A DNA stretch of 63,697 bases, filler included, from Octopus bimaculoides (taxonomy: Eukaryota): NCBI RefSeq assembly GCF_001194135.2. It is 7 parts of 7 records of this genome, joined end to end, with 100 filler letters (N's around TTAATTAATTAA, not from the genome) between each part and the next. Parts side by side here need not be neighbours in the genome. Positions count along the whole stretch, not along the records: positions 27,591 to 33,405 come from NC_068999.1; 6 more parts are not named here. The stretch is one strand, 5' to 3'. The notes under the pieces were generated by a model that was not told the DNA's origin, searched no databases, and worked only from the letters and a program-made list of their open reading frames with translations. This document shows positions 27,547-33,899 of the stretch, in pieces (within the stretch, counting starts at the first letter, position 1; every line of letters starts with the position of its first letter). A program made the position numbers and the translations under genes.

Positions 27547-28429
27547 NNNNNNNNNNNNNNNNNNNNNNNNNNNNNNNNNNNNNNNNNNNNGACTACCGTA
27601 ATTCTGTCTTTTTTCTTCCTTTAAATCACAAGCTATTTCGGCTCAAACGAGGAAAAAGACAGAAGAGAAGAAAGAATAAGGGTAGTCTTACCTGTCGGTC
27701 CGGAGAAAGGGTCAATTTCAACATCCACGTGCTGTCACGATCTCCGAGGTTCACTCCACGTCCACGTGCGCTATCCGATGCTCTACCTTCTCACACGTCC
27801 ACTCTGATGTGTTGTTCGCCGCCGACTGACCCTCGTGCTTCCCTGAATACCGCATGTCCACTGCGGCACTTCCAGTAGGATCCACAGGCCCCACTTCCGA
27901 CAGCACATGCCTACTTCCGATCCTTCCCTACAACACAGCCTGGCCCATAACACCACACTGAATATGTTATAGGGTTTCCTAATGCATTTATAGCTGGTCA
28001 TTTGCTTAGCTGATATAGTTTTTATAAAGTAATAAACATTTGTAAAATGTGTTTTTTCTCAAAGTCAAAAATGCAGTAAATTTTATTCGTTGTACCACAG
28101 CCGTCCCTATTGCATTTGAAGACATAGTATTCACACGGGTATATTAGACGAATCCCAATTTCAGCAACACATATTCGAGAATAGAAAATGGTTTTCGTGC
28201 ATTGAAGTTCGTATTATAGACCCAACTTCGCATATAGAGCACCATGACTTTTTAACACAATTCTTTAAGAAAATAAATTGCGTTTTATATGCCATCAAAT
28301 ACAGTGTGTTGAAGTAGTTTCTGAAGTTGGGTCATTCAACGACAAAAAGAGTCAGAATTAAATACAGTGAATAATGAAGTAAGAAGTAATATGTCTACTG
28401 TGGCAGACGGGTTAACAGGAAATAAATCT

Positions 28430-28620
28430 TTTCTACTTGAGATACAACGCTTGAGATTTTGCGGGGAGGGGAATGTCGGTTACATCGGCCCCAGTGCTCA
28501 ACTGGTACTTATTTCATCGACTCCGAAAGGATAAAAAGCAAAGTCGACCTTGGTGGAATTTGAACCCAGAACGTAAAGGTGGATAAGTGTCAATAAGCAT
28601 TTTGCCCGGCGTGTTAACAT
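28430..28620 (-). mobile_element. Family-1 SINE
   Basis: Reverse-complement core CTGGTACTTATTTCATCGACTCCGAAAGGATAAAAGCAAAGTCGACC. Confidence 0.8.
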
Positions 28621-28805
28621 TTGTATCAGAGAGATGGAAATTTTGAATAATGAAAAAAAAAAAAAAAAAATCAACTGAGCAAGGGCAATAACTCAAGATC
28701 AAGATCTATTTGTTATAGGAAAGAAAAATGCAGTTTATTATTCTTTTATATGGTTCAACCTTGAGGCTGTGGCCATGCTGGGGCACCGCGATTGTAATCA
28801 CGTTT

Positions 28806-29440
28806 TAATTGGCCAATTCTGTGGATTTGGCTTCTCGTGAAGGAGTGAGTACGATATCGCTGCAACTCTTTTGTGTTTCCTGCCTTGATATTGGTTCATC
28901 TGGGATCTTGGATGGTAAGGGGTCAAGTTGTTTCTTGAAAACCTCTACTCCCATTCCATGGAGGTCCCTCAGATGTTTTGGCAAGGAGTTAGATAGCTGT
29001 GGGCCTTTGAACCCCAAGCTATTGCAGTACATTGTCCTCGCCCTAGATGAGACAGCTGGGACTTATGGAACAGTGCAATGACGTCCATTTCGCGGTCTGG
29101 TATAACACTCAATTCCAAAGTTCGGTGCCAGCCCCTCCAGTATCTTCCATTCATATATCACTGCGTACCTCTCGCTCCAAGAAGTACAGTCGTAGCTCTT
29201 TCGGTCTCTCCTAGTAGCTTAGCTGTTCCATTGATGCAATCTTCCTCGTGAAGTATCTCTGAACCGCTCCAAGCTCTGCTATTAATCCTACAGTGCAGGG
29301 TGACCATAATTGAAAGCAGTAGTTTAAAAAATAATAATTTCGAACAATTTATATTAGAAAAGGATATTACAGTGATTGGGGGAAACAATAATCTGATCTT
29401 AGGTAAACACAATGAAAACTACAGCTATACTTCGATCTGA
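28806..29440 (-). mobile_element. CR1/L2-like LINE 3' fragment
   Basis: ERPKELRLYFLER...WKILEGLAPNFGIE...NSLGFKGPQLSNSLPKHLRDL...FKKQLD...IPDEP; a degraded CR1-type C-terminus. Confidence 0.75.
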
Positions 29441-29505
29441 TGATACAATAGGGCCATAAATCCAACATTTTATAACATATACAATATATATATATATATA
29501 CGTAA

Positions 29506-29667
29506 TACACGTGTATAAGGGATGACAACTAGGTGGACATCCAATATGCTAGAAAGAGGTTCGTCAATTTTTCTGGAGAACATTATTTTTCTTTGTGGTT
29601 GGCTCGTTGATGACCTCTTTCTAGCATATTGGATGTCCACCTAGTGGTCATCCCTTATACACGTGTA
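29506..29667. mobile_element. Small MITE-like hairpin element
   Basis: 55-bp inverted arms (29506-29560 and 29613-29667) with one mismatch and a 52-bp spacer. The outer TA could be the TSD, with the TIR starting CACGTG. Confidence 0.7.
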
Positions 29668-29697
29668 ATATAATTTTTTCTGAATTTTCAGATTTTT

Positions 29698-29703
29698 TTT
29701 ATT
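29698..29703 (-). terminator. Candidate polyadenylation signal of the tubulin gene
   Basis: AATAAA on the minus strand about 290 nt downstream of the stop codon; the first one I found after the stop. Confidence 0.35.
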
Positions 29704-29990
29704 TTTTATGTTAGGCGACTTGGTCTTAAATTGAATTAATATTCAATTTATCACCCTATATATATAGATATAGATATTAAAAAGAAATGATACTGAATAA
29801 ATTCAATAAAAATTGTCCAGGATTTTTGTTAGTACAAGTTAACTTTTAATGAAATCCGAGATGATATTGAATAAAACGTTTATGTAATAAATGATGACGA
29901 TGGTAGAGATATAAAATGGAAGGAAGATTATATCCAGAGATATCTTTAAAGGGAAGCAATTCTTTCGAAGGGAGATAATTCCTGTGCTCT

Positions 29991-30062
29991 TCATGATGTA
30001 GCCAGTGCTTCATAATTGTCAATGATACTTTGTACCGTCTCAAACGCATTCTCAAAATCATT
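29991..30062 (-). CDS. Zeta-tubulin-like gene, terminal coding exon
   Basis: Strong acceptor tctttttcttttctttttgtttcttcag|, phase 0. Encodes NDFENAFETVQSIIDNYEALATS* (tubulin helix H12; no acidic tail, as in delta/zeta tubulins). Confidence 0.9.
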   Translation of the reverse strand, partial: NDFENAFETVQSIIDNYEALATS

Positions 30063-30612
30063 CTGAAGAAACAAAAAGAAAAGAAAAAGAAAATACGTAA
30101 CGAGTGAATAGGATCAAATTTGATTTTTGTTTTTTGTAAAGAAAGGAGAAACCAAGCAGTTAACTTGGAGGACAATAGACACATGGTCGTCTTTAAGTTC
30201 TGCGTTCAAATTTAGCTGAGACCGACTTTGCCTTTCAACTTTTCGAGGCCTATAAAATAAAGTATCAGTTGAGCCCTGAGGTCTTGTAACAAAATAAGAA
30301 AAGAATATCTAATCCTTTAGGATAGGTGTGTATCCCAGTGATTGTGGTGGTTGGGGGTGGGGGTCTATTCACGATCATAAGGAGTGGATTCTTAGGCATC
30401 GAGCAGTGAGCTATGTTCTTGAATACGATACTTTATTTATGTTGTTCCAGTTTACTCAGTCGTAAATGAACACCACCTGAGTATTCGTGCATCTCTCTCT
30501 CTCTTTCTGTCTGTCTGTCTGTCACTGTCTATCTATCTATCTGTCTGTCTGTCACTCTGTCTATCTATCTATCTATCGATCGATCGATCGATCTACATAT
30601 CTATCTATCTTC

Positions 30613-30644
<32 letters not shown>

Positions 30645-30712
30645 TTGTCTGTTTAGTTACATATCTATCTATCTATCTATCTATCTACCTATCTATCTAT
30701 CTACCTCAATCG

Positions 30713-30999
30713 TGGATCAGAGACGAGCTGCAGTCATGGATCAAACAGAGACCGGGGCTAGGCGAATGGCACCGCGAGTGCCGCCTTGCTCTCAAGCAAC
30801 TCTGCCATCTGGGACCAAACTTGTGCAGCTTCAATTCCATGAAGGCATTCTATAGAGGATTATTGGAGAGGAGATGTGACGACGTTCTCGGGGAGAATCT
30901 GGGCAACGACGAGGAACTTCAGGGCAACTTTAGAGCTGGGACCTATGGACAATCACCAGAGATCCCTAGCTTGGAAGTGCTATCAAGAAGCATTGCCTG
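30713..30999 (+). mobile_element. L1/Tx1-like LINE fragment inside the last tubulin intron
   Basis: GC-rich block reading WIRDEL...SMKAFYRGLLERRCDDVLGENLG, then by frameshift PMDNHQRSLAWKCYQEALP, which resembles the LAWxC..xALP motif preceding zf-RVT. Confidence 0.55.
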
Positions 31000-31125
31000 A
31001 AATATTTTCGTCAGATCTCCTGTGTATTATGAAATAACAAAAAGCAAGTAAATAAAGATTCATTAAGCTTGCAATTAACAATGTAAAATGTAAATTCAGC
31101 AGAAACAACCAAACCCAAATATATC

Positions 31126-31505
31126 AAAACAGCCATCTATGTATCATACTTAATGTATATACATTGTTGAGAGAGAAGTTGCTGCAGCATTTGCTTTGAG
31201 GTAACATCTTTTATGGACTTGCTGTGTTAAAAACACAATAAATATCAGAGAAACATGAAAATAGAGATGATGAAATGGAGATGATAATTTGGTTGTGAGT
31301 ACATGTATTGAAGAGGTGCAAAAATGCTGAAATGCATCTGATGCTCTCATTAGCCACTGCTGAGGCAAACTTCCATCTCTCTCTGATACTTATTGTATTT
31401 TTAACACAGCACATCCATAATAGATGTTATCTCTGGACAAATAGTGAAGTAACTGGCCTACCGACTGTGTATATACATTTAGTGTGATACATAGATGGCT
31501 GTTTT
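31126..31505 (-). repeat. Long intronic inverted repeat (126-nt gapless arms, 128-nt loop)
   Basis: 31126-31163 pairs with 31468-31505 (36/38). 31211-31251 pairs with 31380-31420 (37 Watson-Crick + 3 GU of 41 on the minus strand). The intervening 47-nt blocks pair at about 30/47. Confidence 0.9.
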
Positions 31506-31563
31506 AATTAAATATTGCCTCAATTGTTTATACTGAACTTTCCAAATAAATCATTTCTTTTAC

Positions 31564-31721
31564 CTGTGAAGCTCCATGCTTCCAGTACCAATGTAAATAT
31601 GCCTTATTTTCATGCATTCTTTTAGCTTTGTATAAAGTTTTCTCCAAAAAGTCAGTTACATAGCCAGTGTTGGATGCCAGCGTCAGAGAAGAAACTTTCT
31701 CACCAGGAAGACAGTGATCGG
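31564..31721 (-). CDS. Zeta-tubulin-like gene, penultimate coding exon
   Basis: Acceptor cttgttgtttag|CC completes GCC (Ala) with the upstream phase-1 G. Encodes DHCLPGEKVSSLTLASNTGYVTDFLEKTLYKAKRMHENKAYLHWYWKHGASQ; the KAYLHWY helix is a tubulin hallmark. Donor CAG|GTAAAA, phase 0. Confidence 0.9.
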
Positions 31722-32033
31722 CTAAACAACAAGAAAGGTACACATGGACGTTTAATTATTTCTTTTAGATTTTCAAGTTACATTGATGATGAAGAGATCC
31801 TACAGCATGCTGGCCGATCTCCTATGATTGAAACCCTCCGTCATCATCATCATCGTTTAACGGCTTCCATGCATGCTATGCATGGGTAGGACAGTTCACA
31901 GGTAAAAAAACTGGCCAGGTAAAAAAAACTATCCCATGCTACTCTGTTTTTACAGTAAATGTTTCTATAAGACCCGCTGGTAACCTTCGTGTGAAACAAT
32001 TTTTTCCAAGTGCATTCAATATATCTCACCCCC

Positions 32034-32152
32034 AAAGATTTGGCTGCTCCATCTGTCACGCCCTGCTACCACGTAACAGTTATTTACGATAAAGGATCTG
32101 AAATACTTGTTATGTAGCAGCAGGGCATGCAAGAAATAGCAGCCAAATCTTT
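32034..32152 (-). other. Intronic pri-miRNA-like stem-loop
   Basis: 52-nt gapless arms (32034-32085 and 32101-32152) with a 15-nt loop. 41 Watson-Crick + 4 GU pairs on the minus strand. Confidence 0.7.
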
Positions 32153-32596
32153 CGCTTTCTGGGGAAAGGAACCGTTTACGTGTGATTTTGATGTCACATT
32201 CGTTGAAAGCATGCGAAATAACCTGGAAAGGAAAAAAAAAACCACGAAACAAAACTCCATTGCTGAGAAACTCAGACTTTCCCAGTGACACAACAGGTCA
32301 CAGGTAGTCTAGCACATCATATTTGTAATATGTGTAATTTATATAATTATGAAGTATTTTATAACATAATTTTATTATTAAGATGGTGCTAGGAGCATAA
32401 ATTAACATAAAGTAACAAGAAATTTTTATAGAAGGTTTTAATCTTGATCCTTCTAAAACAGGGGGTTTGTATCATAGAACCAATGGCAGTATCATATGGG
32501 TTGATATCAAAAGTGTTAGGGAAGAAGAAGAAGAAGAAGAACAACAACAACAACAAAAATAAACAAATACCTTGATATTTGTTGATACAATCTTAC

Positions 32597-32738
32597 CTGA
32601 CCAATAGTCGACTGGACACGGATTCCATGAAACGCAATTCAGGTTATTTTCAATCTGTTGTTGCCGTTTCTGTATGGCTTGTATGAAGTCATATGATTGG
32701 TTCTCACCTCGACCAACCAAAATATTTGAAACAGATTT
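32597..32738 (-). CDS. Zeta-tubulin-like (delta/zeta class) gene, internal exon; most 5' exon visible
   Basis: Translates KSVSNILVGRGENQSYDFIQAIQKRQQQIENNLNCVSWNPCPVDYWS plus 1 nt (142 nt). Donor is TCAG|GTAAGA, phase 1, matching the next exon. The xxVxRG and WNPxPVDxW segments resemble zeta-tubulin as I recall it. The 5' boundary is inferred from a non-canonical AC acceptor. Confidence 0.8.
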
Positions 32739-32764
32739 GTATGAGCAAAACATTAAGGGAAAAA
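32739..32764 (-). promoter_or_regulatory. Candidate U12-type branch point and AC 3' splice site
   Basis: Minus strand reads tttttCCCTTAATgttttgctcatAC|AAATCT. The branch-like A lies about 14 nt from the AC, and there is no AG between this exon and the SINE upstream. Confidence 0.6.
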
Positions 32765-33899
32765 TACGGAAATTATAATAAAAAGGTGCAGGCATGGTTG
32801 TGAGGTGAGGATCCATACTTGGTAACCATGAGGTTTCAGGTTCGGTCCCATTGCTTGGCACCCTGGACGAGCTAACCAATACCTTGTGGGTGAATTTGGT
32901 AGATGGAAACTGTGTGGAAGTCCATCATGTGTGTGTGTGTATATATATATATATATCGTTTAACGTCCGCTTTCCATGCTAGCATGGGTTGGACTACACA
33001 TATATATGAAATGCCTTAACTGAGGATGGTTTACAAAATGGATGTATTTCCTTTTATATATTACACAAACCTGAAACATACGTATTAAATGATTTCAAAA
33101 TATCACTATATATGCGTATATATATATATATATATACATATATATCATCATCATCATCATCATCAGTAGCAGCAGCATCATCATCATTATGACGTTCAGT
33201 TTTCCATGGCTCAGACAGAATTAAATGACACAAATTTTCTACAGCTGGATGCCCTTTCTGTCACCAACCCTTCCTGTCCATATTTCCCCATGGCCAGACA
33301 TACTTGCCAAGAAGACTGCAAACGAAGAAGAACGGAAACCGCTTTGCAATGTAAAGACAACGAGAGAGTAACACACATGCACGTACACACACATACAACA
33401 GGCTTNNNNNNNNNNNNNNNNNNNNNNNNNNNNNNNNNNNNNNNNNNNNTTAATTAATTAANNNNNNNNNNNNNNNNNNNNNNNNNNNNNNNNNNNNNNN
33501 NNNNNCGTAATAATTTACGTAGAAATATTCCACAGGAAATACGTATAGTGTGAGCGCGTGTATGTATGTGTATGTGTGTATGTATGTGTGTGTATGTATG
33601 TATGTGTGTGTGTGTGTCTATGTTTGTGTATGAGTACGTGAATGCATATGTGTGTGAAGGTATGAGTGTATGGCGTATGTATATGCGTGTGAAAAAGAGG
33701 GGAAGGGAAGAGAGTGACATTAGAGAGACTCAGACAAATATGAAAAATAAATTATAACTTATTAAATAAATAAATTAGTAAGTAAATAAAAGAAGCTAAT
33801 AAAATCTGCAGCGAAAGCCAAGGCAGTAACGTAGAAAGGAACGATAATGTTTACGATAATTAAAACAAAAAATTGCATATAGCACGATGATTACATTTG

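What the first reader, a model, noticed from the sequence alone, without database searches (positions are those of the whole stretch)
31126..31505. 380-nt foldback in the last intron with sense-strand G-U bias
Two 126-nt arms align without indels. Two blocks are almost perfect (36/38 and 40/41 paired) but are separated by a much more diverged block (about 30/47), which is odd for a neutrally decaying inverted repeat. In the inner block, 3 of 4 differences are G-U wobbles only on the minus strand, the strand of the pre-mRNA. I saw no TSD or coding remnant. It is a candidate hairpin-RNA/endo-siRNA precursor, ADAR substrate or splicing structure.
Basis: partly seen in the sequence, partly recalled or inferred. 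Interest (0 to 1): 0.7.

Follow-up and report, generated by a model that had tools for sequence, protein, structure and literature searches.

The report
Old intronic foldback in octopus delta-tubulin
A real 386-base foldback, probably a transposon relic, lies in the last intron of the octopus delta-tubulin gene; two octopus species share it, and its arms change about three times more slowly than its loop, so it is an ordinary kind of double-stranded-RNA (ADAR-editing) substrate with a modest hint of being kept by selection.

Summary
The foldback is real. The arms are 31123-31260 and 31371-31508 (138 nt each, no gaps, 110/138 Watson-Crick), with a 110-nt loop. Both strands fold far better than shuffled sequence (z about -15).

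The piece is Octopus bimaculoides chromosome CM046619.1. The host gene is delta-tubulin on the minus strand. The foldback starts 55 nt into its last intron (31563-30063).

The sense-strand G-U bias holds only in the inner block. Over the whole stem the counts are 10 versus 7, and the stem energies are -147.5 versus -143.5 kcal/mol. The clustering of mismatches into a diverged middle block is significant (scan p about 0.005).

Random sites show such a repeat 0.4% of the time. This favours a transposon (MITE-like) origin.

O. vulgaris has the same foldback at the orthologous site with no indels. Of the 28 arm mismatches, 27 are shared. The arms differ by 2.9% between species, against 9.1% for the loop and for background. 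No change is compensatory.

Published surveys report no siRNA pathway in molluscs, so an endo-siRNA precursor is unlikely. A passive ADAR substrate is the best reading. An exapted, editing-inducer-like element is possible. Copy number, editing and small RNAs could not be tested here.

The parts
31371..31508 (-). 5' arm of the foldback in the pre-mRNA (the right arm in window coordinates)
   Evidence: Inverted repeat I1; in-register pairing. O. vulgaris differs at 5 of 138 positions.
31261..31370 (-). 110-nt loop
   Evidence: It differs from O. vulgaris at 10 of 110 positions (9.1%), the same as the background rate.
31123..31260 (-). 3' arm of the foldback in the pre-mRNA (the left arm in window coordinates)
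   Evidence: O. vulgaris differs at 3 of 138 positions.
31211..31260 (-). Inner block, which pairs with 31371-31420. It is nearly perfect on the sense strand, where its non-Watson-Crick pairs are almost all G-U. Neither arm of this block has changed between the two species.
   Evidence: Pair classes. Sense stem -68.4 versus antisense -45.5 kcal/mol. List of substitutions.
31164..31210 (-). Mismatch-rich middle block, which pairs with 31421-31467. It has 29/47 Watson-Crick pairs.
   Evidence: Scan test for mismatch clustering: p about 0.005. The same mismatches are present in O. vulgaris.
31123..31163 (-). Outer block (the terminal inverted repeat proper), which pairs with 31468-31508.
   Evidence: 38 of 42 Watson-Crick pairs over 31123-31164; stem energy about -53 to -55 kcal/mol on either strand.
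31116..31122 (.). Candidate target-site duplication, left copy: CAAATAT
   Evidence: Read directly from the sequence. Chance frequency.
31509..31515 (.). Candidate target-site duplication, right copy: TAAATAT
   Evidence: Read directly from the sequence. Chance frequency.
31564..31721 (-). Penultimate coding exon of delta-tubulin. Its 5' splice site (GT at 31563-31562) lies 55 nt upstream of the foldback.
   Evidence: Translation and splice sites; mapping of protein P0002. All 4 differences from O. vulgaris are synonymous.
30063..31563 (-). Last intron of delta-tubulin (1501 nt, GT...AG). It holds the foldback.
29991..30062 (-). Last coding exon (NDFENAFETVQSIIDNYEALATS plus the stop codon)

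Best explanation
The foldback is an old relic of a non-autonomous foldback or MITE-like DNA element. It inserted into the last intron of the octopus delta-tubulin gene before O. bimaculoides and O. vulgaris split.

It lies inside the pre-mRNA, 55 nt downstream of the penultimate exon. The sense transcript should therefore fold into an imperfect duplex of about 140 bp: two nearly perfect helices of roughly 40 and 60 bp, separated by a mismatch-rich segment. In octopus, duplexes of this kind are the standard substrate for promiscuous A-to-I hyper-editing by ADAR. They are not expected to yield siRNAs.

Shown: the anatomy, the intronic position, orthology in a second species, and slow evolution of the arms.

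Inferred: the transposon origin (from the terminal inverted repeats and a flush 7-nt direct repeat), folding in vivo, and editing.

The slow arm evolution suggests some constraint, but it does not yet prove a selected function.
For: - Anatomy and folding.
- No coding capacity. No Rfam family matches the foldback; the only two sub-threshold matches in the piece lie at 29503-29701.
- Candidate 7-nt TSD flush with the ends of the repeat. Such a match occurs at 0.37% of random sites; a perfect 6-mer allowing shifts of up to 2 nt occurs at 1.4%.
- Species, gene and intron are identified.
- Foldbacks and inverted repeat pairs are common in this locus. The piece holds two more short foldbacks, and the 38.6-kb locus holds 194 inverted pairs of at least 35 nt within 1 kb of each other. 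One of the foldbacks (29503-29670, arms 97% complementary) is missing from O. vulgaris, which suggests recent foldback insertion or loss in these lineages.
- The orthologous copy in O. vulgaris has no indels and shares 27 of the 28 arm mismatches, so the element is old.
- Literature: octopus has exceptional hyper-editing and an exceptional density of loci that can form long dsRNA, and palindromic repeats are edited on their own (PMC5625713). Editing is mostly in introns and 3'UTRs rich in hairpins (PMC9699675). Repeat-derived dsRNA is the main ADAR target across animals (PMC9989829). Molluscs have no siRNA pathway (PMC12479628).
Against: - No second copy of the element was found in 30 kb of O. 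bimaculoides plus 73 kb of O. vulgaris DNA, whereas SINE-like repeats of the same piece recur many times there. Membership of a repeat family is therefore unproven.
- The TSD is imperfect (6 of 7) and AT-rich.
- Neutral decay from a perfect palindrome does not explain the block-wise mismatch pattern.
- A purely passive relic does not predict arms at 2.9% divergence against 9.1% for the loop and the background.
- PMC9989829 stresses evolutionarily young repeats as the main editing targets, and this element is old.
- No RNA-seq evidence of transcription, folding or editing was available.
Confidence: 0.5

Rival explanations
1. The foldback is an exapted structured RNA element kept by purifying selection. 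One version is an ADAR-recruiting 'editing inducer element' that raises editing in the adjacent exon or transcript. Another is a duplex that modulates splicing of the last intron.
For: - The arms show 8 substitutions in 276 nt, against 23.5 expected from composition-matched background (Poisson p = 2e-4). The loop, at 10/110, matches the background exactly (arms versus loop, Fisher p = 0.015).
- There are no indels across 386 nt.
- The inner block of about 105 arm nt has not changed at all.
- A control foldback in the neighbouring intron (32034-32152) evolves at 11.4%.
- The block architecture, including the mismatches, is the same in both species.
Against: - With empirical controls the signal is modest. 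1.6% of template placements elsewhere in the locus have arms this conserved, and 2.8% show as large a loop-minus-arm contrast.
- Another 720-nt non-coding block, which includes SINE sequence, is at 4.3% divergence. Regional rate variation therefore exists.
- The flanks outside the duplex are equally conserved.
- There are no compensatory changes. Five of the 8 arm substitutions break a Watson-Crick pair, and the O. vulgaris stem is about 20 kcal/mol weaker.
- Mismatched positions are not faster than paired ones: 1 of 36 mismatched positions changed, against 6 of 220 Watson-Crick-paired positions.
- Nothing is known about editing of this exon.
Confidence: 0.22
2. The foldback is not transposon-derived. 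It is a local inverted duplication, for example from replication template switching, and it later behaved as in the main explanation.
For: No other copy in about 103 kb of octopus sequence. The arms align without any indel.
Against: The flush 7-nt direct repeat at both ends is what transposition leaves behind, and template switching need not leave one. No single-copy 'parent' segment adjoins the repeat.
Confidence: 0.15
3. The foldback is a precursor of small regulatory RNAs: hairpin-RNA/endo-siRNA, or an unusual miRNA.
For: A long, nearly perfect stem and conserved arms.
Against: - Molluscs, including O. bimaculoides, lack siRNA-class Ago and Dicer and lack siRNA-like reads (PMC12479628).
- The hairpin is 386 nt with a 110-nt loop, far from miRNA geometry.
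- No Rfam match to the foldback.
- Six 12-mers from the arms are absent from the held supplementary files of the octopus miRNA study. This is a weak negative, because some of those files were cut when stored.
Confidence: 0.04
4. The conservation reflects a DNA-level or antisense function, such as a regulatory element or part of a read-through transcript of the convergent neighbouring gene. It does not reflect the sense RNA structure.
For: - Both strands fold equally well overall.
- Conservation extends into non-palindromic flanks.
- A convergent gene on the window's plus strand ends near 29729.
Against: The loop between the two conserved arms is at the neutral rate. The inner block is much more stable on the sense strand. 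There is no evidence of antisense transcription this far (about 1.4 kb) past the neighbour's annotated end.
Confidence: 0.05

Closest known systems
MITEs and foldback-type non-autonomous DNA transposons (for example the palindromic Harbinger-derived repeat of Xenopus, which is heavily edited; PMC5625713)
   Same: Short (386 nt) and non-coding. It has long terminal inverted repeats that make the whole element a hairpin, it is AT-rich and intronic, and a short direct repeat lies flush at both ends.
   Different: No family members were found in the roughly 103 kb that could be searched. The TSD is 7 nt with one mismatch, so no superfamily can be assigned. The arm identity is patchy, and the arms evolve more slowly than neutral DNA.
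Inverted-repeat dsRNA substrates of ADAR hyper-editing (inverted Alu pairs in primates; intronic hairpins in octopus)
   Same: An intramolecular duplex well over 30 bp long, inside a pre-mRNA intron, in the animal with the highest reported hyper-editing.
   Different: Here a single self-complementary element forms the duplex, not two separate repeat copies. Editing itself was not observed.
Editing inducer elements (the Gabra-3 intronic duplex; PMC3479170, PMC5654063)
   Same: A long intronic stem a short distance downstream of an exon, conserved between species, and separate from the exon.
   Different: No edited site is known in the adjacent exon, no functional test exists, and no such element has been described in cephalopods. 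The resemblance rests on position and conservation only.
Drosophila hairpin-RNA (hpRNA) endo-siRNA loci
   Same: A long inverted repeat that can fold on itself.
   Different: The host clade lacks the Dicer-2/Ago2-type pathway (PMC12479628). No target gene is evident. The element is intronic, not a dedicated transcription unit.

Membership tests
MITE / foldback DNA transposon | Terminal inverted repeats | tested here: met
   138-nt arms; the outer 42 pairs include 38 Watson-Crick pairs.
MITE / foldback DNA transposon | Target-site duplication flanking the element | tested here: inconclusive
   CAAATAT/TAAATAT lie flush with the ends, matching at 6 of 7 positions. The frequency at random sites is 0.37%. 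The repeat is AT-rich and imperfect, and no empty site is available for comparison.
MITE / foldback DNA transposon | Small size without coding capacity | tested here: met
   386 nt. The translated ORFs have no homologues.
MITE / foldback DNA transposon | Many dispersed homologous copies in the genome | not testable with these tools
   No copy in 30 kb of L002 or 73 kb of L003. The whole genome is not searchable here. The scans of metagenome and prokaryote-genome collections gave only a chance 24-mer in a bacterial contig.
ADAR hyper-editing substrate | Long, mostly paired intramolecular duplex in a transcribed region | tested here: met
   Sense-strand MFE -163.5 kcal/mol, z -15.5, with a 34-bp uninterrupted helix. 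It lies inside an annotated intron.
ADAR hyper-editing substrate | Clusters of A-to-G RNA-DNA differences on the transcribed strand | not testable with these tools
   No RNA-seq access.
Editing inducer element | Long intronic stem near an exon, conserved across species | tested here: inconclusive
   It lies 55 nt downstream of the exon. The arms are at 2.9% divergence against 9.1% for the loop and background. Only two species are available, the empirical p is about 0.02-0.03, and there is no covariation.
Editing inducer element | A site-selectively edited adenosine in a nearby exon whose editing depends on the stem | not testable with these tools
   No editing data. A search of the supplement of PMC8382921 for delta-tubulin found nothing.
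hpRNA / endo-siRNA precursor | An siRNA pathway (siRNA-class Dicer and Argonaute) in the organism | tested here: not met
   From the literature, not from a computation here: PMC12479628 reports none in 32 molluscs, including O. bimaculoides.
hpRNA / endo-siRNA precursor | 21-23-nt duplex reads from the arms | not testable with these tools
   No small-RNA data.
Canonical miRNA precursor | Hairpin of about 60-80 nt with a stem of about 22-35 bp and a small loop, or a match to a known family | tested here: not met
   386 nt with a 110-nt loop. No Rfam match to the foldback. Arm 12-mers are absent from the held supplementary files of PMC9699675.

The most novel reading that the evidence does not exclude
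A transposon-derived intronic duplex has been kept by selection since before the split of O. bimaculoides and O. vulgaris, with its pattern of helices and mismatches preserved. On this reading it works as a cis-acting ADAR-recruiting (editing-inducer-like) or splicing-modulating element for the delta-tubulin transcript. As far as I know, and none turned up in my literature searches here, it would be the first such element described in a cephalopod.
Probability: 0.15. Interest if true: 0.6.

Novelty: new member of a known kind. Interest (0 to 1): 0.35.

Why it matters
Octopus edits its RNA more than any other animal studied, and most of that editing falls in intronic hairpins whose role is unclear. 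This foldback is old, its orthologue in a second species is known, and its arms evolve about three times more slowly than its own loop. That makes it a small, well-defined test case. With public RNA-seq and a few more octopod genomes, one can ask whether some repeat-derived intronic duplexes are maintained, for example as ADAR landing pads next to exons, or are merely tolerated. If the conservation signal disappears with more species, this is one more ordinary intronic foldback.

Tried and rejected
- Global sense-strand G-U bias: rejected. Counts are 10 versus 7 (11 versus 7 with the 31261/31370 pair, p = 0.48); MFEs are -163.5 versus -166.2; stem-only energies are -147.5 versus -143.5. Between the two species, A/G and T/C differences on the sense strand are equal (7 each).
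- External copies. The terminal 21-mer was scanned in metagenome and prokaryote-genome collections. The single hit (L001) is a 24-nt chance match in a GC-rich bacterial contig with no further similarity.
- Searching for other copies through translated ORFs of the hairpin in the protein collection: nothing at E <= 10.
- Contig look-up of the old 149-aa gene model: not on record. The newer 474-aa model worked.
- Pfam on the C-terminal 113 aa: no hit. The PDB sequence search gave weak but consistent tubulin matches.
- Rfam at a permissive threshold: only two chance-level hits, both on the other foldback at 29503-29701.
- A predicted long-range helix (31785-31750 with 31114-31079, -29 kcal/mol) that would enclose the exon and the hairpin. 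It beats shuffles of its own sequence, but 4.5% of random window pairs in the locus do as well, and it is weaker in O. vulgaris. It was dropped.
- Known miRNA: arm 12-mers are not in the held supplementary files of the octopus miRNA paper. This is a weak negative.
- Known editing in delta-tubulin: nothing in the held supplement of PMC8382921. The key cephalopod editing paper, PMC5499236, is not held.
- Covariation: with two sequences, none of the 120 pairs changes on both sides. This is uninformative.

Full report
**Where the piece comes from.** The only real DNA is window 27591-33405. Three open stretches on the minus strand join through canonical splice sites into a peptide. That peptide is 100% identical to an Octopus bimaculoides protein (sequence). 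The protein's cluster also holds the current RefSeq model, XP_052830668.1, 'tubulin delta chain', 474 aa. A contig look-up with that model returned 38.6 kb of chromosome CM046619.1 (L002). The piece matches L002 25212-31026 at 100% identity in reverse orientation, so L002 coordinate = 58617 minus window coordinate. A PDB sequence search places the C-terminal exons in the tubulin fold, and the protein aligns end to end with Patella delta-tubulin.

The penultimate exon is 31721-31564. The last coding exon is 30062-29994, followed by the stop codon at 29993-29991. The last intron is 31563-30063 (GT...AG, 1501 nt), read directly. The foldback occupies nucleotides 56-441 of that intron, so 'last intron, sense = minus strand' is correct.

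**The observation.** The repeat finder reports arms 31123-31260 and 31371-31508: 138 nt each, 80% complementary, 110 nt apart. An in-register comparison without gaps gives 110 Watson-Crick pairs. Ten further pairs would be G-U in the minus-strand RNA and 7 would be G-U in the plus-strand RNA. The remaining 11 are transversion mismatches.

Both strands fold far beyond chance: -163.5 and -166.2 kcal/mol, z -15.5 and -14.7, with 0 of 100 shuffles folding as well. The concentration of mismatches in the middle block is statistically real: 24 of 5000 permutations reach the observed scan statistic.

**The claimed strand bias.** It does not hold for the stem as a whole. The counts are 10 sense versus 7 antisense wobbles, or 11 versus 7 with the next pair inward, 31261/31370 (p = 0.48). 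With the arms joined by a tetraloop, the stem energy is -147.5 (sense) against -143.5 (antisense).

The bias is local. The inner block is 23 kcal/mol better on the sense strand: over 31204-31262 there are six sense G-U pairs and no antisense ones. The middle block is 12 kcal/mol better on the antisense strand. A local 6:0 split picked out after the fact is weak evidence. From established knowledge of transcription-associated mutation asymmetry, an excess of A-to-G and C-to-T changes on the coding strand would produce the same pattern without selection.

**Ends of the element.** CAAATAT (31116-31122) lies immediately outside the left end of the repeat. TAAATAT (31509-31515) lies immediately outside the right end. 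In the two octopus loci, a flush 7-mer matching at 6 or more of 7 positions occurs at 0.37% of random placements. A perfect 6-mer, allowing shifts of up to 2 nt, occurs at 1.4%. Together with the terminal inverted repeats, the small size and the lack of coding capacity, it points to a foldback or MITE-like insertion. The 7-nt length does not identify a superfamily.

**Copy number.** This could not be settled. No second copy exists in the 30 kb of non-N sequence of L002 or in the 73 kb of L003. The SINE-like repeats of the same piece recur many times there. Scans of the metagenome and prokaryote collections gave only a 24-nt chance match in a bacterial contig. A search with the translated ORFs found nothing.

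**Base rate.** Foldbacks are common here. The piece holds two more: 29503-29670 (58-nt arms, 97% complementary) and 32034-32152 (57-nt arms, 77%). It also holds an inverted pair of SINE-like copies. The 38.6-kb locus has 194 inverted pairs of at least 35 nt within 1 kb of each other, and the studied foldback is the longest. PMC5625713 reports that the octopus genome has an exceptionally high fraction of loci able to form long, nearly perfect dsRNA.

**Comparison with a second species.** A full-length protein search found the O. vulgaris delta-tubulin, and its locus was fetched (L003, 73 kb). The loci are colinear. Window 31939-30994 aligns to L003 60903-61841. The foldback is at L003 61326-61711, without a single indel.

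Substitution divergence by region:
- Arms: 8/276 (2.9%).
- Loop: 10/110 (9.1%).
- Adjacent exon: 4/158, all synonymous.
- The 55 nt between the splice site and the foldback: 2/55.
- The next 63 nt on the far side: 1/63.
- All other aligned non-exonic DNA of the locus: 1534/16831 (9.1%).

With composition-matched background rates, the arms should show 23.5 substitutions and the loop 9.5. The observed numbers are 8 and 10 (Poisson p = 2e-4 for the arms). A foldback of comparable age in the neighbouring intron (32034-32152) shows 13/114 (11.4%). The young foldback at 29503-29670 is absent from O. vulgaris. Twenty-seven of the 28 arm mismatches are shared by both species. The imperfect, three-block architecture therefore predates the split and has hardly changed since. 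The inner block (about 105 arm nt) has not changed at all.

**How strong the conservation signal is.** It is only moderately strong.
- I slid the same arm-loop-arm template over all other aligned non-exonic sequence of the locus. 1.6% of placements have arms with 8 or fewer substitutions, and 2.8% have as large a loop-minus-arm contrast. None combines both features.
- Another 720-nt block (L002 21078-21800) is at 4.3% divergence although it contains SINE-like sequence. Regional rate variation is therefore real in this locus.
- The substitutions give no support for pairing. None of the 120 pairs changed on both sides. Five of the 8 arm changes break a Watson-Crick pair, always in O. vulgaris, whose stem is about 20 kcal/mol weaker.
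- Mismatched positions are no faster than paired ones.
- Two species cannot decide this question.

**Mechanism.**
- Shown: a duplex-forming element of about 140 bp lies inside the delta-tubulin pre-mRNA, and it is old.
- Inferred from published work: in octopus, such intramolecular duplexes are hyper-edited by ADAR. Octopus has the highest hyper-editing signal among the species surveyed, and palindromic repeats can be edited on their own (PMC5625713). Most editing is in introns and 3'UTRs rich in hairpins (PMC9699675). Repeat-derived dsRNA is the main ADAR target across animals (PMC9989829).
- The endo-siRNA reading is unlikely, because molluscs, O. bimaculoides included, lack siRNA-class Argonaute and Dicer and lack siRNA-like reads (PMC12479628).
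- A miRNA reading fails on geometry and has no database support.
- The most interesting reading still open is an exapted element comparable to the mammalian editing inducer elements. Those are conserved long intronic stems near an exon (PMC3479170, PMC5654063). Position and arm conservation fit. Nothing else could be tested.

**Verdict.** The foldback is real, transposon-like and ancient, and it belongs to a well-known class of intronic dsRNA-forming repeats. The global strand-bias argument fails, and a TSD candidate exists. The arm-versus-loop conservation is a genuine but modest hint of constraint, and it is worth a cheap follow-up with public genomes and RNA-seq.

Noticed in passing
window 29503-29670: A second, much younger foldback: 58-nt arms that are 97% complementary, with a 52-nt loop. 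It is embedded in a (TA)n tract about 320 nt downstream of the delta-tubulin stop codon, between two convergent genes. It has no counterpart anywhere in the 73-kb O. vulgaris locus, so it is a lineage-specific insertion or loss.
   Followed up: partly
window 32034-32152: A third foldback (57-nt arms, 77% complementary, 5-nt loop) in the preceding intron. It is present in O. vulgaris and evolves at about the neutral rate (13/114 substitutions). It served as a control.
   Followed up: yes
window 32708-32909: The RefSeq 474-aa delta-tubulin model reads straight through this stretch. Residues of roughly 273-350 have no counterpart in Patella delta-tubulin. The stretch overlaps a dispersed SINE-like repeat (32868-32994). 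The first AG upstream of the conserved coding part is at about 32709-32708. The exon is probably over-extended in the annotation; the O. vulgaris model is only 351 aa.
   Followed up: partly
window 28480-28622 and 30193-30283; also 31841-31898 and 32868-32994: SINE-like repeats with many copies in both octopus loci. The first two form an inverted pair 1.6 kb apart that brackets the 3' end of the gene, and they could form another long duplex if co-transcribed.
   Followed up: no
window 30477-30722: A compound (CTGT)n/(CTAT)n/(CGAT)n microsatellite of about 250 nt in the same intron. The region 30434-30994 does not align with O. vulgaris.
   Followed up: no
L002 21078-21800 (outside the window): A 720-nt intronic block with only 4.3% divergence from O. 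vulgaris and no indels, although it includes tRNA-derived SINE-like sequence. It shows that low-divergence blocks occur in this locus without obvious function.
   Followed up: partly
window 31750-31785 with 31079-31114: A predicted long-range pairing (-29 kcal/mol) between the intron upstream of the penultimate exon and the flank just beyond the foldback. It would enclose the exon and the hairpin. 4.5% of random window pairs in the locus pair as well, so it is not significant.
   Followed up: yes
window about 27591-29729, plus strand: A convergent neighbouring gene (275-aa product in the annotation) ends near 29729, about 260 nt from the delta-tubulin stop codon. The two 3' ends probably overlap or abut, which allows sense-antisense pairing.
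   Followed up: no
L001 7779-7802: A 24-nt exact match to the foldback terminus in a GC-rich bacterial metagenome contig (LSQX01396254.1). There is no similarity beyond it, so it is a coincidence.
   Followed up: yes
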